Below the pieces are notes generated by a model. That model had not been told where the DNA came from. It saw only the letters and a program-made list of their open reading frames with translations, and ran no database searches. Positions 3,483 through 59,960 of a stretch of DNA of 61,332 nucleotides are shown here, piece by piece (within the stretch, counting starts at the first letter, position 1; each line of letters begins with the position of its first letter). Position numbers and translations under genes: made by a program. Source of the DNA: Octopus bimaculoides (taxonomy: Eukaryota); contig NC_069000.1 of assembly GCF_001194135.2 (NCBI RefSeq), positions 13,192,268 to 13,253,599 on the forward strand, given 5' to 3'.

Positions 3483-5812
3483 ACCCTCTTGTATAATACA
3501 TCGTAAAAGTGGCTCGGCTGATATATAGGATCCAAAGATTTGTAGCATGTATCTTCCATTACTCTGTGGTATCAAAAATCCATATGCGTGTAAGCGTATC
3601 AGAATGAAAACTGGACAGATTGATAATATATTTCTTAAGCAGTCACTGTCATTTTCCACACTGATCCACTTCAAATACTTTACCTGCTTGTTAATTATTG
3701 AGCAGTATTGAAGGAGAAAGCTCGTATCTAACTGAAAGAATTCGTAATGAAATTGTAACACATTTCTAAACATCATTACTTTGTTGCGACATTAAACTAT
3801 GACACTGCACGAATGTTTCATTATTTGTAATCTCTTCGAAAACCTACTGACTTTGTAGGCAGAAAACATACCTCTTGAGACACTCTTGTTGCAAATCCGT
3901 TTTTTTTTTTTTGCTCCTTCTTTCTAATGATTTGTGCAAAGTGTCTAGCATCTGCTTATTCTTATATTAATCTTCCTTAAAACTGACAATACGAATAAAC
4001 TGGCTCCAGTTCAGCTGGGTTCAGGGTTTTAGGATTTAGTGTAGTGTTACCACACATTATCAGATTTCTTAAGTAATGTATTTACTTCAGATTATTTTAA
4101 ATGTTTTATTACTCCTTCAGATTTGTCAATAAAAGCCTACGAAGCGAGTGAAAAAGCAATAGTGGTTATAATACTCGTAGGTGAAATACTTCTCCAACAG
4201 AACTCAAGTCAGATTTTTCTAACGTTAAGTCGAACACGATGCGCAGTAGTGATAGTAAAATTTATTACTTATCGGGTTAGTTGGCGATGAAGTAATTTTC
4301 ATGGCAGAAATTGGAAGAGAAAGAAGGAATGCAGAAACAAGGAATTATTTAAAAGCATCAAAAGCTCTCGTGATGATGTCTCCGAAAATTAAAGTAGCAG
4401 AAACAATGGTGAAAAGGCTGAAGAGGATTAAAGAAGATAAGAATGCCATGTGTCACAGGCAGGTGAAGAAAGATTGGTTAGGGCTTAGATATTACAGTTG
4501 TCAATGTCGACCACTGTTCCGCGTGATTTAAGGAATTATGTGGCGGATAGAATTTGCCATGAATGCAGATTACGAATCAATAATGGTAAGCAACTTTAAA
4601 TCCAGCTGAAACAAAGTGTGTGTGTGTAACAATCTCTGTAAGGGTTTTCACTTCTATAAATTTATTTGTAGAGAAATTCAATGGCCAAATGGATTCAGTA
4701 TCGAAAACTGACAACTCAAGCTACAACATTACACTGTGTCCTTAAAAACAAATTTCTTACCGAAAAAAAAACAACTGCTTAAATATCTCTGATTGAAAAA
4801 TAACGTCAAAAGGTATTGATAGTAGAAAGATAAATAATCTTTTGGATTTCACATAATAAATGTGTGTCTGTGTGTCTGTGTAATATAAACTCAAAAACAT
4901 ACATGTATAAATATGAGACACTTGTTCGGTCTGACGCGGAGACTGAACCTGAAACGGCATCGTTAAAAAGCGAGGTTTCCTAAGTAGATGTGGTGCAGCG
5001 ATAGAGTTTTACTAGAATTTATATTTTGACCTAAGTTATCGAATACGCCGCACTAGAAATTTCTACACTATGCTAGTTTTCCCATATACACGCAGAAATC
5101 TCATAAAAGAGTCATTTTACTGAAGTACCACGTAATTTTCATGTTCTCGACATAGGTACTCATGTCAATGGTAATGAAAAGGAGTATTGCCTTGCCGGAA
5201 GATCAAACTAGATGTTATAAGTTTCATATCACTTTACTTCATGCTAAGAATTGTCTAACGAATACAAAGATATATTACTTATTTCACAATAAAATGGATT
5301 CTATATTCAACATATTAAAATCATGTCATTTCCTTTTCCTGTATTTCATCCCAGTTATATGCCATTTTGTTTTCAACAGAAATCGATTTCTCTGTTTTTC
5401 CAACAGAATTCAAATTATAATTTTTTCAATTATTTATCTTAAATTTCTGTTTATACTGTGTTTTTTTAAAATATTTTATTATATTTTTTGTGTCAGTAAT
5501 TTTCTTGTGCTTTGCTTTAAATGTTTTTCTTATGTCAAAATGTTATTTCCGTTTTAAAAACACTACTTCACGATCCCAATTTGTAAATTTTTTACCTTTT
5601 TCTTGCCTGATTTTGAGTTTCTTTCTTTATTAAATTCTTTCCATTTTGTATATATTTTCTAAAACTTCTTCAATTTTCGTTTGAAATATTTCAAATATTT
5701 TCCGATTCAGTTGTTTTCTAAGTTTTCTTTTATACAAAATCTTTCCACCATACTTTCTGTAATTGATTTCTAAAGTAATTTTTTTGTTTTTGTTTATTAT
5801 GACTCTTTTCAG

Positions 5813-6028
5813 ATAGCGTCCTAAATCGGTTTATGACTCTTGGAGTCACAGCTGCCGTCGCCATCACTGTTGGTAGCATCGTAATATTCATTGTCTGCAT
5901 TGTAGCCATTATTTGCTGCTGCAAGAAATCGGCCTGTAAAAAAGCGGATCCAAATAGTATCACAACTACAGCAACTTCCGTTGTGACGAACGGAAGTGTA
6001 ACACCTTTCCAAGGAAAAATAAATAAAG
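5813..6028 (+). CDS. Transmembrane exon of a single-pass membrane protein: (D)SVLNRFMTLGVTAAVAITVGSIVIFIVCIVAIICCCKKSACKKADPNSITTTATSVVTNGSVTPFQGKINK
   Basis: Pyrimidine-rich acceptor ctcttttcAG|; hydrophobic helix of about 25 aa followed by CCC-KK (positive-inside); symmetric phase 1-1, 216 nt; donor AAG|GTACCA. Confidence 0.8.
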
Positions 6029-6193
6029 GTACCAAGATGTTTTGTATCTCTTAATATTGCTAATAAAATACAAACGAAAGTAGCAATTAGTGAAAAAAAA
6101 ATTAGTTGATTCAAAGAATGACCATGAATGTACATCATTATGAGATTTAATTTGTATGTTCTGATTTCAAAATTTGGAAATTTGATACACATA

Positions 6194-8339: not shown

Positions 8340-8506
8340 AGGCGCAGGAGTGGCTGTGTGGTAAGTAGCTTGCTTACAAACCACATAGTTCCGGGTACAG
8401 TCCCAATTCATGGCATCTTGGGAAAGTGTCTTCTACTATAGCTTGGGGCCGACCAAAGTCTTGTGAGTGGATTTGGTAGACGGAAACTGAAAGAAGCCCG
8501 TCGTGT
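8340..8506 (+). mobile_element. SINE family A, 5' half
   Basis: GGCGCAGGAGTGGCTGTGTGGTAAG… head, near-identical to the 58975 copy. Confidence 0.85.
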
Positions 8507-8713
8507 ATATATATATAACCTTTTTTCACACCATATTATGTATCCTGTTTCTTTGTAACTGGGATGGGAAAGAATCCTTGACACCCTCGTAAATCTGTAC
8601 CCACCTCCCAAAAGCCGTTCCATTTTTCATCGCTCACGGGAAGTTTCTTCTCTTTGAAACGGATTGTGTCTATCTATCTNNNNNNNNNNNNNNNNNNNNN
8701 NNNNNNNNNNNNN

Positions 8714-12548: not shown

Positions 12549-12826
12549 AGACGGAAACTGGAAGAAGCCCGTCGTATATATGTTTATATATATATATGTG
12601 TGTATGTGTGTGTATATGTTTGTGTGTCTGTGTTTGTCCCCGCAACATCGCTTGCCAACCGATGCTGGTGTGTTTACGTCCCCGTAACTTAGCGGTTCGG
12701 CAAAAGAGACCGATAGAATAAGTACTAGGCTTACAAAGAATAAGTCCTGGGGTCGATTTACTCGACTAAAGGCGGTGCTCCAGCATGGCCGCAGTCAAAT
12801 GACTGAAACAAGTAAAAGAGTAAAGA
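12549..12826 (+). mobile_element. SINE family A, young copy with its head lost in a gap
   Basis: High identity to the reverse complement of 58566-58840. Confidence 0.85.
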
Positions 12827-13046: not shown

Positions 13047-14369
13047 TTTGCCTATGTGTGTATATTTCAACTTCATTATTTAGTAATGCACACGTGTGTT
13101 TTTCAAGTTTAACTTTAGCGTTTGTCAAATAGTTAATCTGCTGGTTATTACCACTTTACTCCCTCAAAGTTAGACCTCATATTTATCTTGTTATATACCC
13201 AATCCATATGCGTAATTTAAAATAGAATAAGCGAACTAGCAGTTTCAGGAGAGGAACATTTGTACAGTATTTGTAAGATCGTCAACTTGTTAATAATTTT
13301 CAAAAATTTCCAGCAGCGGAAGATACAAATCAGTAAAAAGTTTTAAATCGAATAATGCAGAATTGTATGTCTCACTATTAGCGTTGATCACTGCCCAAAA
13401 GCAGCCATCTTGAATGCTAATAAATAAAGAGTATAATTGAAAATTCCCTGAGGGACTAATTTTCTAGAAATTTAATTTACGTTTGTTAAAAAGATACAAA
13501 CCGAATTAGTGAAGTAATAAAACTTCCACATGAATGCTGAATTTTAGTTTATTTGAATGTTAATGTTTGTATTATGTGTAGCTAACTCGACAAAAACAAA
13601 CTGACGAAATAAAAGATTAAGTAATGTAAATACGTCACTCGGCTGAAAATATTTTATTGTTTCCTGTGAGGTGTATTGAGTGAATGAATAACAATAAACA
13701 TATGCTATAAACTAATGGTAATATTGGTTTACAAATAGACTGGTGACTTATGGACAATAAAACCAAATATATAGTAGTCTCGCTCTATAGAATGGAGGTT
13801 GAATATAATTTTGGATATAACTTTCGTTCCGGTTATACTTAAGAGTAGAAGTTCTCTTGTTAGCATTACAAATTTCTGATTCGAATACCAAATACTTTAA
13901 ACAATGTTTCTCTCAATAATATTTTCTTGTAATTACTCTTCTGTTTAATCGTTCTATGCAATTGCAGAAAAGGAAATAATTTTACTTTGCTTGTTAATCT
14001 TAATTAAACAGCTGCATTCAGTCTCGAATTTTTCGTATTCTACTGGTAATGTACACACTAAAGCCAGTTTCGAGAATAAAAATATATCCGAACGTATAAT
14101 TTATTAAGTCAATTCGTCTCTTCTTTCATCGCTACAGAACTTGCATATATACATATGTACATACAATGACGTGTTAACGATGTGGCTGTTGGACGAACAG
14201 TAAGAATTCTGCACCCTAAGTACAAGTATGGTAGCGTGTAATACATACAATTCAATGAGCTGGAAAATTTCTATGTCCTTAAATTATCTATGAAATTCGT
14301 AGAAAAGTCTTTAAATGCAACACAATGTGTACAAGTGTCACAACAGTTTGCAATGGCAAAATTTTTCTG

Positions 14370-14822
14370 CACCCCACACGTAATTATCAAGCGGGGTGCA
14401 GTCTGTCGACTTAGGTGGCCTGATGTTAGGGGTGATCTGGTCGCAGAAATTATCTGACAGTTATGACTGGGTTTTTTTGCTAGTGTGACATGGTGTAGAG
14501 TCCAGTTGCCAGATATAGGGTCTTCTAACCGCCACCCTCTTCAACCAGGTCAGCACTATTTCCTCCGGGCACTTGATGTAGGCCTCCGTGTTGAGTCTGA
14601 GACCGTGTGGGAAGATGAATGGTAGTATAACTTTGAAATCAGTAGATGTCCTCAGATTAACACCCAAACACTCTAAAATGTTTGGATTGGAGCTTCCGGC
14701 GCGAATGCCAAGCAGTACAGCATGTCGTTTCCAAACTTCTGAGAGAGTGAGTTGTGTCATGATGGTGTTTTTATCACAGACAGTGCCCAACTGCCTCTAC
14801 TATACTTTGTAGTTGACAAAAT
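14370..14822 (-). mobile_element. Internally deleted Tc1/mariner (maT/DD37D-like) transposase remnant
   Basis: Translation SEVWKRHAVLLGIRAGSSN…GVNLRT fused to …PFIFPHGLRLNTEAYIK…RPYIWQLDSTPCHTSKKTQS*LSDNF…PKSTDCTPLDNYVWG: degenerate versions of the mariner-type QQDxAPxH and WPPxSPDxNPxD motifs, with a stop. Confidence 0.85.
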
Positions 14823-14929
14823 TAAAAAACAAACAATGTGCATGTGCGAAATTAGAAATATAAAATGGCGGCAATTTACCCATCGCACCTTGTATATACA
14901 TATACGTAAATACATATGTATACATACAT

Positions 14930-19510: not shown

Positions 19511-19677
19511 GACGCAGGCGTGGTTGTTTGGTTAGTAGCTTACATCCCAACCACACGGTCCGAGTTCACTCGCACTGCATGGCACCTTAGGCAAGTGTCT
19601 TCTACTATAGCCTCTGGCCGACCAAAGCTTTATGAGTGGATTTGGTAGCCGGAAACTAAAAGAAGTCTGTGGTATTT
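19511..19677 (+). mobile_element. SINE family A, 5' half, followed by long (TG)n
   Basis: Head and CCTTAGGCAAGTGTCTTCTACTATAGCC segment. Confidence 0.8.
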
Positions 19678-19688
19678 GTGTATATATA

Positions 19689-19772
<84 letters not shown>

Positions 19773-20726
19773 TATGTGTGGTTCGTGTGTTTGTGTGTGT
19801 GTGTGTGATTGTGTAAAGCTAGGTATGCTGTTAACCAAAGAATTGATGATAATAATATTAATAATAATGATAATAATAACCACATCAACATTAACAATAC
19901 TACTAATAATAATAAGAAGAAGAATGTCTTAAGTTGACACGATGTAAAATTTTGGTGGGGCACAGTTATTGTAATTTCTAATTACAATTAGTACTTTACC
20001 AGGCCCGGTGAAATTTTGAATACAGAACGCTAAGGGTCATAACTAAGAAAACAACAGAGGATAAGTATAGATATCTATCACTCGTACCCCGTGTCATCAA
20101 AAATGGCAAATGTTTTATCAATTATTGAAAATTAAGAGGGGTGCATTCGTTTCAGATGATGAGTTAAACCATTAATTAATATATATGCGCTAAAATTTTA
20201 TTTAAGATTTCTCGACCGCCCCTTAATTGTGACAGAAAACAAATCAAAAAGCATGAGAGAAAAAAATACACAAATATATTACCTGTTACGAATTATTTTA
20301 TTTATTCAATAGAAAAGTTTTCAGGTGACTGCCATTTGTGTAAAAAGAAATATTCGTTAGTTCATAGAATCGTGATAGAAATACCATGTCAAAGAACGTA
20401 TAAGGTTGTTTGTATGTGAGAGTGTATGTATTTAGCTCTTATTTCTAGCAGTGTAGGTGTTCTAACACCCTCAGTTGTATTTAATGAGATTTATTGTTTT
20501 GCTTTTTGATGAAACTCTGCTAACTAGCTGCCTCATTTAATTATATATATATATATGTATATATATACAAACACATACAGCGAGCCATAGCTTGATCGAT
20601 CGATAGAGAGATAGACAGAGAGATAGATAGATAGACATACACACGAACATGTATATGTGTGTGTGTCGATGTATATAAATGTATATGTATATATATATAG
20701 ATATAGATATATATATATATATATAT

Positions 20727-21744: not shown

Positions 21745-22584
21745 NNNNNNNNNNNNNNNNNNNNNNNNNNNNNNNNNNNNNNNNNNNNNNNNNNNNNNNN
21801 NNNNNNNNNNNNNNNNNNNNNNNNNNNNNNNNNNNNNNNNNNNNNNNNNNNNNNNNNNNNNNNNNNNNNNNNNNNNNNNNNNNNNNNNNNNNNNNNNNNN
21901 NNNNNNNNNNNNNNNNNNNNNNNNNNNNNNNNNNNNNATATATATATATATATATACATACACTACGCCAACGATAGCAAGAGGAGCGTGCTCAGCACAT
22001 TTGGTAAGAGTTACATATATTATCTAGTAATAGTTTGACACAGCTCCAGTTTCGTAGGCTCGTCAGACGAACCGATCTCGTCAGGCTTGTAGACACAGAA
22101 TAGATAAACTTATTTAATCATTTTCTCTTGTGTTTTCAATTCACAACTACTATAAGCCGATGCATAAAATTTTAAAAATCATAAAATAACTTACTCATTT
22201 GTTAACCGATATATATAATACTTCTTATAAATGTTCAACTTTGTGTCTTTATTACAACTGTCTGTGGATGATAAAATACAAACCCCGGCTTGTTCTTTAC
22301 ATACACTCAGAGTAGGAAACTAGCCGAGTTTAACTTCGCTTTTTATCCATGCAGTGTAACTAAAATAAAGCTCCAGCTTTATATTGGGAGTCCATTGCAA
22401 CGACGGTCCCCTTCGTCTCAGTACTGGTGACCTTGAACGAAATCAAAATTAATTATTTCGATTATAAATTTCCAAATTATCAGAGTTGTTTTGAAATATA
22501 GAAAAAAATGCTTACTCGACTATGAAGTTCTTTGTTAAGGATCCATGTAACTGAGAGCTTCCATTGTCTCTCAGCTAATTCAAG

Positions 22585-36112: not shown

Positions 36113-36450
36113 TTTTATCTTTTACATATTTCAGTTATTAGACCGCGGTCATGCTGGAGTAGCGCCTTGAAGAATTTTTAGTCTTATGAATCGACACCAG
36201 TATTTATATCTTTTAAGCTTGGTACTTAGTCTACCGGCCTATTTTGCAGACCCGCTAAGTTACGGGGACGTAAACACGCCAACACCAGTTGTCAAGTGGT
36301 GGTGAAAGACAAACACAGACACATAAACACACATACATACCTATAAACTCTTACATTTATATACAACGGTCTTCTTTCAGTTTCCGTCTATCAAATCCAC
36401 TCACTTTGGTCGGCCTGAGAATATAGCAGAAGACACTTGTTCAAATTGCC
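36113..36450 (-). mobile_element. SINE family A, head-truncated
   Basis: Collinear with 58566-58900. Confidence 0.8.
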
Positions 36451-43677: not shown

Positions 43678-44033
43678 CTTTTACTTGTTTCGGTTATTTG
43701 ACAGCGGCCTTGAAGGGTTTTAGGCGAACAAATGGACCTCAGGACTTATTTTTTAAGCCTGGTACTTATTCTACCGGTTCATTTTTGCCGAACCGCTAAG
43801 TTACGGGGACGTAAACGCGCCAACACCGCTTATCAAGCGGTGGTTGGCGGACAAAGTGACACGAAGACACATACACACACATAGACATATAAGTTTATAC
43901 GACCGGCTTCTTTTAGTTTCTGCCAACGGAATCCACTCACAAGACACTTGCCCAAGGTGCCACGCAGTGGGACTGAACCTGAAACCATGTGGTTGGAAAG
44001 CAAGCTTCTTACAACACAGCCATGCCCGCTCCT
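43678..44033 (-). mobile_element. SINE family A, near full length with small deletions
   Basis: Head GTGGGACTGAACC and tail CTTTTACTTGTTTC both present. Confidence 0.85.
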
Positions 44034-54030: not shown

Positions 54031-54058
54031 AAACAATAAAATAATAAGAGAGACAGAC

Positions 54059-54145
54059 AGGCAGACAGAGAATCAGGCAGACAGAGAATCAGGCAGACAG
54101 AGAATCAGGCAGACAGAGAATCAGGCAGACAGAGAATCAGGCATA
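54059..54145. repeat. Minisatellite, 16-bp unit AGGCAGACAGAGAATC, about 5 copies
   Basis: Direct reading. Confidence 0.9.
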
Positions 54146-54864
54146 CAGACAGAGAAACAGACATACAGACATACAGACAGACAGAGACAAAGGGATATAA
54201 AGAGAGAGCCAGAGAGAGATTTCCTTTTATATATGTACCATTCCTCCGAGAGAGCTACACATGTATTCAAAGAGATATGTGCTTACAAGAGAGACAATAG
54301 GTAGACGTATAGTTAGATAGGTAACATACATACACAAATACATATACATTTGAGGCTTGTAACATTATTCATTGTTTTTCCAATCGTCATAACAATGCGA
54401 CTACATATATCCATCCAGCTACCTAATAACTCTATTTATATTCATCATACACACCTACAAACGCAAGCATACACAAACACAAAGATATACATAAATGCAC
54501 ATATATGTATGTATTTGTGTTGGGGTACGTATTTTACTTCACTAAGAAATTAAATCTCTGCCAGAACACAACTTTTATTGAAAATAACATAAAGAAGAAA
54601 AAGCAACACTGACATTCATACATTAATGCTTGTTTTTGTTTTTGTTTTTGCTTTTGTTATTTAATGGTAGGCATTGAATATTAACGAGTCTATGCTACAG
54701 TACCAATATATACTACAAGAGCTTCAATATCATTTGTAGCAACACCAAGACATATGCAGAATACAATAGAGCAATGAGTTTAGAATATAGTATATAAGCA
54801 TAAAATCAAAACCAATAATGTTAATCTTAATAAAATATACTTAGCGTTCAAATAGCCACGGTAC

Positions 54865-54960
54865 ACATGGCTTAATTGGGTCTGTGTTGAGCTCACGATC
54901 ATAAAGTCGTAGGTTCCATACCTGAACAGAGTAATATATTTTTGTCCTTAAGTGTATTTT
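54865..54960 (+). mobile_element. SINE family C head; its continuation appears at about 55400-55470
   Basis: Degenerate tRNA-like head; TTTCATGTTGCCCCAGTCTACTCAGCT at about 55407 matches the family C core. Confidence 0.5.
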
Positions 54961-54965
54961 TGTTC

Positions 54966-55603
54966 TAAACCAGGACTGCCATGTTATGTTGGCAAACAAT
55001 CTTTACTACAAAATACTGTTGCTGAATATCTCACGTTGTGAGATTTAAAAATAGTAATTTTGAAATTTATAAATCAGTGACTAGTTGTCACTTTGAAAAC
55101 TATATATTTCTAATGGGAATTTGGCAGCGCCACATCCAGCCGAACAGTTATTCTGTGCTGACGAAGGGAAATAGCCCAGAAATCGCGATACACAGAAACT
55201 GTTTTGAGCTGAGTGGGGGTACTAGATTCCCTTGTTCGAAAATATAAGGGCACAGATCATGTCATATAGCCAGCTGAGGACGATGTCTCCTGAGGCTAAA
55301 TTACAGCAACATTAGTCTTAAACCAGGACTGCAAACAATCTTTACTACAAAGTTCTGTTGCTGAATATCTCACGTAGTGAGATTTAAAAATAGTAATTTT
55401 CATTTTATTTCATGTTGCCCCAGTCTACTCAGCTATAATGAGTTCCAACTATATTTTCGAGAATGTGCATAGAGTACTGGGGTGAAAACAAATAAGGGAT
55501 TCGAAGCCAATTGTAGTCGTAGACGTTAGAAATTCTCCAGAGGCTAAATTACAGCAACATTAGTCTTAAACCAGGACTGCAAACAATCTTTACTACAAAG
55601 TTC
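54966..55603 (+). repeat. Local direct-repeat block around the hammerhead
   Basis: 54966-55061 matches 55319-55400 (period 353 nt; first copy has a 13-nt extra segment); 55287-55355 matches 55535-55603 (69 nt, 1 mismatch). Confidence 0.85.
55143..55203 (+). ncRNA. Minimal type I hammerhead ribozyme motif
   Basis: Stem I AACAGT-(TA bulge)-TTCTGTG / CACAGAA-ACTGTT; core CTGACGA 55158-55164; stem II GGG/CCC with loop AAATAG; GAAA 55179-55182; palindromic stem III ATCGCGAT; AUA cleavage triplet (cut after 55190). Non-canonical A10.1-A11.1 mismatch. Confidence 0.75.
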
Positions 55604-58565: not shown

Positions 58566-58975
58566 CTCTTTTACTCTTTTACTTGTTTCAGTCTTTTGAC
58601 TGTGGCCATGCTGGAGCACCGCCTTTTTAGTCGAGCAAATCGACCCCAGGACTTATTCTTTAGAAGCCTAGTACTTATTCTATCGGTCACTTTTTGCCGA
58701 ACCGCTAAGTTACGGGGACATAAACACACCAGCATCGGTTGTCAAGCGATGTTGGGGGGACAAACACAGACACACAAACACATACACACATACATATATA
58801 TATACATATATATGACGGGCTTCTTTCAGTTTCCGTCTACCAAATCCACTCACAAGGCTTTGGTCGGCCCGAGGCTATAGTAGAAGACACTTGCCCAAGA
58901 TGCCACGCAGTGGGACTGAACCCGGGACCATGTGGTTGGTAAGCAAGCTACTTACCACACAGCCACTCCTACGCC
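58566..58975 (-). mobile_element. Full-length young tRNA-derived SINE, family A (about 410 bp, internal microsatellite)
   Basis: On -: A box TGGCTGTGTGG, B-box-like GGTTCAGTCCC, CORE-like CTTGGGCAAGTG, internal (TA/TG)n, tail …GACTGAAACAAGTAAAGAG; many homologous copies in the window. Confidence 0.9.
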
Positions 58976-59824: not shown

Positions 59825-59960
59825 GGTCGTAGCCGACGCCGTCGTCGACGTCATCATCGCCGTCGTCGACGACATCATCGTCGTCGTCGACGTCATCATC
59901 GTCGTTGTCATCGTCATCGTTGTTGTTGCTGTTGTTTTCATCGTCATCATCGTCCTCACA
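59825..59960. repeat. Degenerate (GTC/ATC)n tract
   Basis: Direct reading. Confidence 0.85.

What the first reader, a model, noticed from the sequence alone, without database searches (positions are those of the whole stretch)
55143..55203. Minimal type I hammerhead ribozyme with a palindromic stem III (dimer-type)
Seen: intact core CTGACGA…GAAA, 13-bp stem I with a TA bulge, 3-bp stem II, palindrome ATCGCGAT forming stem III, and an AUA cleavage triplet (cut after 55190). Known: minimal type I hammerheads with a palindromic stem III are typical of Penelope-like elements and metazoan non-LTR retrozymes, and cleave as dimers; a stem I bulge can contact loop II. Inference: a self-cleaving RNA on the + strand, antisense to the probable host intron. 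The A10.1-A11.1 mismatch may reduce activity.
Basis: partly seen in the sequence, partly recalled or inferred. Interest (0 to 1): 0.85.

Follow-up and report, generated by a model that had tools for sequence, protein, structure and literature searches.

The report
Solo hammerhead ribozyme motif, octopus-like genome
A 61-base stretch has the sequence and fold of a type I hammerhead self-cleaving RNA of the kind carried by small animal retroelements ("retrozymes"/Penelope-like elements), but it is a single, slightly imperfect copy with no partner nearby, so it is most likely an ordinary retroelement relic.

Summary
At 55143-55203 (+) there is a 13-bp helix I with a 2-nt bulge, CUGACGA, a GGG/CCC helix II on an A·A mismatch, GAAA, the palindrome AUCGCGAU and A17, with the cut after 55190. 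A relaxed hammerhead descriptor finds only this site in the window. A motif with helix I of at least 7 bp and helix II of at least 3 bp arose in 1 of 400 dinucleotide shuffles.

Two copies are predicted to form a textbook double hammerhead with an 8-bp helix III. The monomer misfolds, as do experimentally validated coral and axolotl retrozyme ribozymes. One of those (Ax353) also has a mismatch at 10.1/11.1.

The architecture is the "canonical" metazoan retrozyme type, not the "minimal" Penelope type. Helix I continues into a 117-nt hairpin (z -4.6).

Evidence against:
- No Rfam hammerhead model matches, even at E ≤ 10.
- My own 4-seed model ranks the site first, but only at E 0.27.
- There is one copy only, with no tandem partner and no RT/endonuclease ORF.
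- I could reach no relatives, so covariation is untested.

The "antisense to a host intron" claim cannot be checked.

Verdict: a probable retrozyme/PLE-lineage hammerhead relic in an octopod genome. It is a new member of a known kind, of modest interest.

The parts
55143..55157 (+). Helix I, 5' strand: AACAGUU, a 2-nt bulge (AU at 55150-55151), then UCUGUG
   Evidence: Sequence; pairing.
55158..55164 (+). Catalytic box CUGACGA (C3 U4 G5 A6 C7 G8 A9)
   Evidence: It is the only CTGANGA...GAAA match in the window that also has flanking helices.
55165..55178 (+). Helix II and loop 2: A10.1·A11.1 mismatch, GGG/CCC (3 bp), loop AAAUAG
   Evidence: The validated Ax353 ribozyme has U·U plus 3 bp at the same place.
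55179..55181 (+). Core G12 A13 A14
55182..55189 (+). Helix III: perfect 8-nt palindrome AUCGCGAU. As a monomer it gives A15.1-U16.1 and U15.2-A16.2 capped by CGCG; between two copies it gives 8 bp.
   Evidence: RNAcofold places an 8-bp intermolecular helix here.
55190..55190 (+). A17. The predicted self-cleavage site is between 55190 and 55191 (triplet AUA).
   Evidence: Position follows from the motif register. Cleavage itself was not tested.
55191..55203 (+). Helix I, 3' strand (CACAGA AACUGUU)
55115..55231 (+). Long imperfect hairpin that continues helix I (about 35 bp in all) and carries the hammerhead at its tip
   Evidence: MFE is -48.6 kcal/mol with z -4.64, and 0 of 200 shuffles fold as well. 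The pair list includes 3 G·U pairs in the helix I extension that exist only on the + strand. The - strand gives z -4.45.
54959..55075 (+). Repeat copy A1. It matches 55312-55400, with 96% identity over 54992-55061. It carries a 14-nt insertion (about 54979-54992), and its 5' part has diverged.
55286..55400 (+). Repeat copy C+A2 (115 nt). With A1 it brackets the hammerhead-bearing segment B (55062-55285) at a 339-nt period.
55534..55603 (+). Third, 3'-truncated copy (C+A3'), 98.6% identical to 55286-55355. It is separated from copy 2 by an unrelated 133-nt spacer D that has no hammerhead.
   Evidence: B and D are unrelated. D is not notably structured.

Best explanation
The motif is a genuine hammerhead ribozyme, or the recent relic of one. 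It is of the canonical metazoan type I kind and sits on the + strand at the tip of a 117-nt hairpin. It belongs to a small non-coding retroelement of the retrozyme / Penelope-like pLTR lineage, inserted in a repeat-rich, non-coding part of an octopod genome.

Inferred mechanism. When transcribed as a single copy, the RNA misfolds, because half of the palindrome pairs with the catalytic core. When two copies meet, either in a multimeric transcript or in trans, the two AUCGCGAU palindromes pair into an 8-bp helix III. This frees both cores, and each cuts after A17 (55190|55191).

In active relatives this cleavage releases unit-length RNA that is circularised and copied back into DNA. The 339-nt-period partial duplication around the motif (A1...A2, about 1.3 units) is what a more-than-unit reverse transcript of a circular or multimeric template would leave.

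At this locus the element is a solo monomer. It has a weakened helix II (A·A at 10.1/11.1) and no partner, so it is probably inactive or only weakly active, with no host function.

Shown: the sequence motif, its improbability by chance, the predicted monomer and dimer folds, and the architectural match to validated ribozymes. Inferred: cleavage, retroelement origin and inactivity.
For: - All conserved boxes and the helix topology are present.
- The site is the only descriptor hit in 61 kb. A motif of comparable quality arose in 1 of 400 shuffles.
- The dimer minimum-energy structure is the double hammerhead: -43.1 kcal/mol against 2 x -17.2 for the 61-mer.
- With 6-bp helix I versions, ddG of dimerisation is -8.7 kcal/mol, against -8.8 for the coral ribozyme and -10.5 for axolotl Ax353. 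The monomers likewise prefer a non-hammerhead fold.
- The layout matches experimentally cleaving retrozyme ribozymes (sequences). Mussel Mg353 has the 8-nt palindrome ACGCGCGU. Axolotl Ax353 has a U·U mismatch at 10.1/11.1, a 3-bp helix II, the 8-nt palindrome ACACGUGU and A17. Ax353 cleaves poorly as a monomer and well as a dimer.
- A covariance model built only from those four validated ribozymes ranks this site first in the window, aligned full length in the correct register.
- Helix I extends into a stable hairpin (z -4.64) with G·U pairs specific to the + strand.
- The putative 339-nt circular unit is more structured than shuffles (z -3.55).
- GC is 37-42%, below the 50% noted for retrozymes.
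- Solo monomers are a common state of retrozyme families.
- The host is an octopod-like mollusc. Molluscs are known to carry retrozymes and hammerhead-bearing PLEs.
Against: - No Rfam hammerhead family matches, even at E ≤ 10 on 86 nt.
- My own model gives only 12.7 bits, E 0.27.
- The otherwise highly conserved G10.1-C11.1 pair is replaced by A·A.
- There is only one copy in the window and no tandem array. The neighbouring repeat unit has an unrelated spacer without a hammerhead.
- No RT or GIY-YIG ORF is present in the window.
- No related sequence could be retrieved from any reachable collection. There is therefore no covariation or copy-number evidence.
- The hairpin is almost as stable on the - strand.
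Confidence: 0.68

Rival explanations
1. It is a chance look-alike. An ordinary genomic inverted repeat (hairpin) happens to have a 33-nt tip that spells the hammerhead boxes, and no ribozyme ancestry or activity is involved.
For: Curated Rfam models do not recognise it. My 4-seed model gives E 0.27. The 10.1-11.1 pair is broken. The relaxed descriptor does hit in 3.5% of shuffled windows. The hairpin is about equally stable on both strands. There is a single copy.
Against: A hit of this quality occurred in only 1 of 400 shuffles, even without requiring the 8-nt palindrome or the 13-bp helix I. By my own arithmetic, the odds are far below 1e-6 that a given hairpin loop carries all of the following by chance: CUGANGA flush against the 5' arm; GAAA plus a perfect A...U palindrome plus a non-G flush against the 3' arm; and a helix II in between. 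The palindrome, helix lengths and A17 match validated retrozyme ribozymes.
Confidence: 0.1
2. It is a truncated pseudo-LTR of an autonomous Penelope-like element (for example the Hydra or Penelope/Poseidon clade) rather than a non-autonomous retrozyme. The hammerhead would be the usual pLTR ribozyme, left behind after the RT-endonuclease ORF was lost.
For: Hammerheads sit in the pLTRs of canonical PLEs, and most genomic copies are solitary remnants of truncated elements. Mollusca carry hammerhead-bearing PLE clades. Retrozymes are reported to derive from pLTRs. The complex partial direct repeats around the motif resemble the partial-tandem insertions described for PLEs.
Against: Metazoan PLE hammerheads are typically the minimal type: long helix II, short helix I, an extra base after A9 and no helix III. 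This motif has the canonical retrozyme-type layout. No RT or GIY-YIG remnant was detected in any ORF of at least 50 aa in 61 kb. The hammerhead lies in the unique segment B, not in the repeated A/C segments.
Confidence: 0.15
3. It is an active or host-exapted ribozyme. It would cleave a transcript of this locus, in trans-dimer form or with protein help. Its role would be either as part of a live octopod retrozyme family that makes circular RNAs or as a regulatory element of a host gene.
For: The catalytic boxes are intact, including both CpGs of the palindrome and the CpG in CUGACGA. The 10.1/11.1 mismatch has a working precedent in Ax353. The fold is stable, with G·U pairs on the + strand. 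Retrozyme circular RNAs are abundant in other molluscs.
Against: There is no partner copy for dimer formation. No evidence of transcription could be obtained. No host gene was identified. Octopod CpG depletion is weak here (observed/expected 0.93), so retained CpGs say little about age or selection.
Confidence: 0.1

Closest known systems
Canonical type I hammerheads of metazoan non-LTR retrozymes (coral Amil224, mussel Mg353, axolotl Ax353/Ax330; Cervera & de la Peña 2020, PMC7229834)
   Same: Same boxes (CUGANGA / GAAAY / RUH). Helix I is 6 bp before an interruption, and helix II has 4 positions with a 5-6-nt loop. Helix III is 1-2 bp capped by a palindromic loop, so the whole helix III region reads as a 6-10-nt palindrome. 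Like Ax353 it has a mismatch at 10.1/11.1, a 3-bp helix II, an 8-nt palindrome and A17. The predicted monomer misfold and double-hammerhead dimer are the same. The putative unit size of 339 nt falls within the 170-400-nt range, GC is low, and helix I continues into a self-paired stem.
   Different: There is a single copy rather than a tandem array, and the adjacent repeat unit lacks a hammerhead. The mismatch is A·A rather than U·U. C is at position 7. Stem and loop sequences are unrelated (12.7 bits against a model of the four). No expression or cleavage data exist.
Minimal hammerheads of Penelope-like element pLTRs (Cervera & de la Peña 2014, PMC4209133)
   Same: Type I topology. The helix III positions are palindromic, implying action as a dimer. 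The motifs are mostly solitary and scattered in invertebrate genomes. Low intrinsic activity is expected.
   Different: PLE minimal motifs have helix II of 7-8 bp, helix I of 4-5 bp, an unpaired base between A9 and G10.1, a conserved G10.1-C11.1 pair and essentially no helix III. None of these holds here. No RT-GIY-YIG ORF or pLTR pair is nearby.
Newt/salamander satellite-2 and Schistosoma Sm-alpha hammerheads (classical dimer-type or SINE-borne type I hammerheads)
   Same: Type I with a weak helix III. The newt type needs a double-hammerhead dimer. The ribozyme is carried by short non-coding repeats. From memory only, not tested here: loop 2 shares the AAAUA string with the Schistosoma ribozyme, and a helix I bulge 6 bp from the core is where that ribozyme makes its loop-bulge contact.
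   Different: Those families are present in thousands of tandem or dispersed copies and match Rfam Hammerhead_1. This site is a lone copy that Rfam does not detect.

Membership tests
Hammerhead ribozyme, type I | Conserved core boxes CUGANGA ... GAAA, with A15.1-U16.1 and a non-G at position 17 | tested here: met
   CUGACGA at 55158-55164, GAAA at 55179-55182, U55189 and A55190. This fits the CUGANGA / GAAAY / RUH criterion quoted.
Hammerhead ribozyme, type I | Three helices around the core, with helix I open-ended (both RNA ends leave through helix I) | tested here: met
   Helix I has 13 bp with a bulge and is open. Helix II is a 3-bp hairpin. Helix III is a 2-bp, tetraloop-capped hairpin in the monomer or 8 bp in the dimer.
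Hammerhead ribozyme, type I | G10.1-C11.1 (or at least a Watson-Crick pair) at the base of helix II | tested here: not met
   A55165·A55178 mismatch. The strict descriptor therefore gives 0 hits. A precedent exists: validated Ax353 has U·U at this position.
Hammerhead ribozyme, type I | Match to curated Rfam hammerhead covariance models | tested here: not met
   No hammerhead family is listed at gathering score or at E ≤ 10 on 1.5 kb and on 86 nt.
Hammerhead ribozyme, type I | Site-specific self-cleavage leaving 5'-OH and 2',3'-cyclic phosphate ends | not testable with these tools
   Needs in vitro transcription of the monomer and the dimer.
Hammerhead ribozyme, type I | Covariation supporting helices I-III across homologues | not testable with these tools
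   No homologue could be retrieved. The window has one copy. Metagenome, viral and prokaryote-genome scans gave only chance hits or nothing. Protein-level searches for ORFs over the motif gave nothing.
Metazoan non-LTR retrozyme | Tandem repeat of 170-400-bp (up to about 1 kb) units, with at least two consecutive units each holding a complete type I hammerhead | tested here: not met
   TRF finds no array here. There is one hammerhead in 61 kb. The local repeats A1 / C+A2 / C+A3' bracket one hammerhead segment (B) and one unrelated segment (D). This is compatible only with the 'solo monomer' state described.
Metazoan non-LTR retrozyme | Non-coding, low GC (<50%), highly self-paired unit RNA | tested here: met
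   No Pfam domain in the local ORFs. GC is 0.37-0.42. The putative 339-nt circle has z -3.55 and the hammerhead hairpin z -4.64. The unit boundaries are inferred, not shown.
Metazoan non-LTR retrozyme | Expressed as linear and circular unit-length RNA | not testable with these tools
   No transcriptome access.
Penelope-like element (autonomous) | ORF with an RT and a GIY-YIG endonuclease, flanked by pLTRs that carry the hammerhead | tested here: not met
   No RT or GIY-YIG hit among the 120 filtered (non-low-complexity) stop-to-stop ORFs of at least 50 aa in the window. The hammerhead is not inside the repeated segments.
Penelope-like element minimal hammerhead | Helix II of 6-8 bp with an unpaired base after A9, helix I of 4-5 bp, helix III absent or reduced to the palindromic 15.2-16.2 positions | tested here: not met
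   Here helix II is 3 bp plus a mismatch, helix I is 6+7 bp, and helix III is 2 bp plus a tetraloop (against the definitions).

The most novel reading that the evidence does not exclude
The motif is one member of a so-far undescribed octopod or cephalopod retrozyme family. Its hammerhead tolerates an A·A mismatch at 10.1/11.1, works only as a dimer, and produces roughly 340-nt circular RNAs in octopus tissues. Alternatively, this copy may have been co-opted to cleave a transcript at this locus. No paper in the searchable library describes hammerhead retrozymes in cephalopods.
Probability: 0.12. Interest if true: 0.5.

Novelty: new member of a known kind. Interest (0 to 1): 0.3.

Why it matters
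If it is real, it adds cephalopods to the animal groups that carry canonical type I hammerhead retroelements. It also gives a second natural example, after axolotl Ax353, of a hammerhead with a non-paired 10.1/11.1 position. That is useful for defining search descriptors, because both Rfam and strict descriptors miss it. For the biology of this locus it probably matters little: a lone, partner-less copy in repeat-rich non-coding DNA is most likely a dead retroelement insertion.

Tried and rejected
1. Rfam cmscan on the whole window, on 1.5 kb and on 86 nt gave no hammerhead family.
2. I looked for a second hammerhead in the window. The CTGANGA...GAAA pattern gave 7 matches against 2.75 expected. 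Only 55158 has helices. The double CTGACGAG at 22050-22084 (-) has no complementary flanks.
3. I searched for other copies of the hammerhead segment or its flanks in the window, using blastn with word size 7 and E up to 5. Only the local A/C repeats came up.
4. I tested whether spacer D is a degenerate version of the hammerhead segment B. It is not: the local alignment score is within the shuffle range, and D is unstructured.
5. I tried to reach family members through ORFs called over the motif. A word-indexed search with the 69-aa ORF found nothing. A full HMMER scan of 1.84 billion representatives found only multi-stretch hits to long repetitive proteins, which I judged spurious.
6. DNA pattern scans:
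   - Metagenomes gave 9 hits, all in GC-rich bacterial contigs without helix I, as many as chance predicts.
   - Viral contigs gave 0.
   - Prokaryote genomes gave 0.
7. I tried to identify the host gene and organism.
   - Pfam found nothing, first on 10 ORFs and then on 120 concatenated ORFs.
   - Only a mariner-like fragment gave a lead, to Octopus bimaculoides. Its 20-kb locus shares SINEs with the window but holds no hammerhead-related sequence.
8. A covariance model built from four validated retrozyme ribozymes ranks the site first but not significantly.
9. The supplementary files of the two PLE papers are not held, so no cephalopod PLE or hammerhead sequences were available for comparison.
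10. My reading of tRNA-like A/B boxes just upstream (54867-54925) is not backed by ARAGORN or Rfam.

Full report
**The observation**

The sequence at 55143-55203 (+) reads AACAGTT-AT-TCTGTG / CTGACGA / A-GGG-AAATAG-CCC-A / GAA / ATCGCGAT / A / CACAGA-AACTGTT.
- a 13-bp helix I with a 2-nt bulge;
- the CUGACGA box;
- a 3-bp GGG/CCC helix II sitting on an A·A mismatch at 10.1/11.1;
- G12-A14;
- the perfect palindrome AUCGCGAU;
- A17, with the predicted cut between 55190 and 55191.

**Is it more than chance?**

The bare pattern CTGANGA-N(6-30)-GAAA occurs 7 times in the window against 2.75 expected. I wrote a type I descriptor that also requires helix I, helix II, U16.1 and a non-G at position 17.
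- It gives no hit when 10.1-11.1 must pair.
- It gives exactly one hit, this site, when a mismatch there is allowed.

In 400 dinucleotide-preserving shuffles, the relaxed descriptor hit in 14 shuffles. A hit with helix I of at least 7 bp and helix II of at least 3 bp occurred once. That test did not require the 8-nt palindrome or the extension of helix I, so the real improbability is greater.

**Model-based checks are negative or weak**

No Rfam hammerhead family matches at gathering score. None matches at E ≤ 10 on 1.5 kb or on 86 nt.

I took four experimentally cleaving retrozyme hammerheads from the supplement of PMC7229834: coral Amil224, mussel Mg353 and axolotl Ax353 and Ax330. I aligned them, built a covariance model without the candidate and scanned the window with filters off. 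The candidate is the top hit. It aligns end to end in the correct register, but scores only 12.7 bits (E 0.27). With four seeds the model is dominated by their particular stem sequences. The result is consistent with the hammerhead reading but is not independent proof.

**Architecture**

By the definitions in PMC4209133, the two types differ as follows.

| Feature | Canonical metazoan type I | Minimal PLE type |
|---|---|---|
| Helix I | 6 bp | 4-5 bp |
| Helix II | 4 bp | 7-8 bp |
| Helix III | 1-2 bp, capped by a small palindromic loop | essentially none |
| Base between A9 and G10.1 | none | one extra |
| G10.1-C11.1 | – | conserved |

The candidate has a helix I of 6 bp followed by a bulge and 7 more pairs. 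Its helix II has 4 positions with a 6-nt loop, and its helix III is 2 bp (AU/UA) capped by CGCG. It is therefore the canonical, retrozyme-type layout, not the minimal one.

The validated ribozymes show the same design. Mussel Mg353 has the 8-nt palindrome ACGCGCGU. Axolotl Ax353 has U·U at 10.1/11.1, a 3-bp helix II, the palindrome ACACGUGU and A17. Ax353 cleaves 22% in one hour as a monomer and efficiently as a dimer. The A·A mismatch therefore weakens the motif but does not disqualify it.

**Folding**

Alone, the 61-mer prefers a fold in which U4-G5 and C7-A9 pair with one half of the palindrome (-17.2 kcal/mol).

Two copies together have as their minimum-energy state the classical double hammerhead:
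- an 8-bp intermolecular helix III;
- both helices II intact;
- both cores free.

This dimer has an energy of -43.1 kcal/mol, a gain of 8.7 over two monomers.

Trimmed to a 6-bp helix I, the candidate behaves like the validated ribozymes. Its hammerhead fold is -5.1 kcal/mol against a monomer MFE of -10.6. The dimer gain is -8.7, against -8.8 for coral and -10.5 for Ax353, with the same double-hammerhead structure. The "dimer-type" reading is supported at the level of prediction.

**Surroundings**

Helix I does not stop at 13 bp. The flanks 55115-55142 and 55204-55231 continue it into a 117-nt imperfect hairpin (-48.6 kcal/mol, z -4.64). Three G·U pairs in this extension exist only on the + strand. 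The - strand is nearly as stable (z -4.45).

Around the hairpin lies a local repeat structure. A 115-nt segment, C+A, occurs three times:
- at 54959-55075 (copy A1; its 5' part has diverged and it carries a 14-nt insertion);
- at 55286-55400;
- at 55534-55603 (3'-truncated).

The first two copies bracket segment B (55062-55285), which holds the hammerhead, at a 339-nt period. The second and third bracket an unrelated, unstructured 133-nt segment D.

Read as A-B-C-A, the first part is about 1.3 units of a 339-nt element. That size is typical of retrozymes. A more-than-unit cDNA of a circular or multimeric RNA would leave such a terminal redundancy. The putative circle folds with z -3.55. This reading is an inference, and the D-C-A' tail does not follow from it simply.

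The window has no other copy of B, no tandem array and no second hammerhead.

**Genomic setting**

The window is 32% GC, has a CpG observed/expected ratio of 0.93, is full of microsatellites and contains 4.3 kb of N gaps. A mariner-like fragment at 14464-14796 (-) has its best match in an Octopus bimaculoides protein (69% identity). The window shares SINE families at up to 93% identity with the O. bimaculoides locus around that gene. The source is an octopod or a close relative.

None of the filtered (non-low-complexity) ORFs of 50 aa or more has a Pfam domain. No PLE reverse transcriptase or endonuclease is nearby and no host exon was identified. The statement that the motif is antisense to a host intron cannot be evaluated.

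**Relatives elsewhere**

None could be reached.
- Searches with the ORFs that happen to span the motif found nothing relevant.
- Pattern scans of metagenomic, viral and prokaryotic collections gave only chance hits or none.
- No eukaryotic genome collection is searchable by DNA with these tools.

Copy number and covariation, the decisive computational tests, remain open.

**Interpretation**

The best explanation (confidence about 0.68) is a genuine hammerhead of the retrozyme / PLE-pLTR lineage, present here as a solo and slightly degenerate monomer. It would cleave after A55190 only when paired with a second copy. Such a copy does not exist in cis here, so this one is probably an inert relic.

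The rivals are:
- a truncated pLTR of an autonomous PLE (0.15);
- a chance look-alike in an ordinary hairpin (0.10);
- an active or co-opted ribozyme (0.10).

Type I hammerheads in short non-coding repeats are well known in many animal phyla, including molluscs. I found no paper describing them in cephalopods. The finding is a new member of a known kind, and its interest is modest.

Noticed in passing
window 14274-14917 (-): Fragment of a mariner-like transposase ORF. Its best match is an uncharacterised Octopus bimaculoides protein (69% identity). The DNA is 71-80% identical to the O. bimaculoides locus L010. This was the only clue to the organism.
   Followed up: partly
window, e.g. 12674-12826, 58570-58723, 43678-43814, 36119-36273, 8426-8517, 19590-19775: Many copies of at least two short interspersed repeat families are shared with the O. 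bimaculoides locus L010 at 70-93% identity. They generate recurrent pseudo-ORF motifs such as 'VVGKQATYHTATP' and 'GLNLEPCGW'.
   Followed up: partly
window 54867-54925 (+): About 220 bp upstream of the hammerhead is a stretch that reads like tRNA-type Pol III A and B boxes (TGGCTTAATTGG ... GGTTCCATACC). It is followed by a T5 run at about 54941. ARAGORN and Rfam do not call a tRNA here, so this is only my reading of the sequence.
   Followed up: partly
window 55009-55062 (and the copy at 55348-55400): The repeated segment A forms its own stable hairpin around ATCTCACGTTGTGAGAT (z -3.6 for copy A1).
   Followed up: partly
window 59837-59920: A CpG-rich 21-nt tandem repeat (CGCCGTCGTCGACGTCATCAT, 3.9 copies) stands out in otherwise AT-rich DNA. 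It gave the second-best, spurious hit of my hammerhead model. Whether it is coding or a promoter-proximal element is unknown.
   Followed up: no
window 54047-54187: A 16-nt minisatellite (CAGGCAGACAGAGAAT, about 6-8 copies) lies 0.8 kb upstream of the repeat cluster that holds the hammerhead.
   Followed up: no
window 5803-6051 (+): This stop-free frame encodes what looks like a transmembrane helix followed by basic residues (GVTAAVAITVGSIVIFIVCIVAIICCCKKSACKK). It may be an exon of a membrane protein or may be chance. The concatenated homology search found no match.
   Followed up: partly
window 22050-22084 (-): Two CTGACGAG boxes lie 18 nt apart and are followed by GAAAC. This resembles hammerhead core boxes, but no complementary helix I or III flanks exist, so I judged it a chance match.
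   Followed up: yes
L010 (O. bimaculoides CM046625.1, 17071316-17091856): 45% of the fetched 20.5-kb locus reads as N, so sampling octopod DNA through gene look-ups yields little usable sequence.
   Followed up: no
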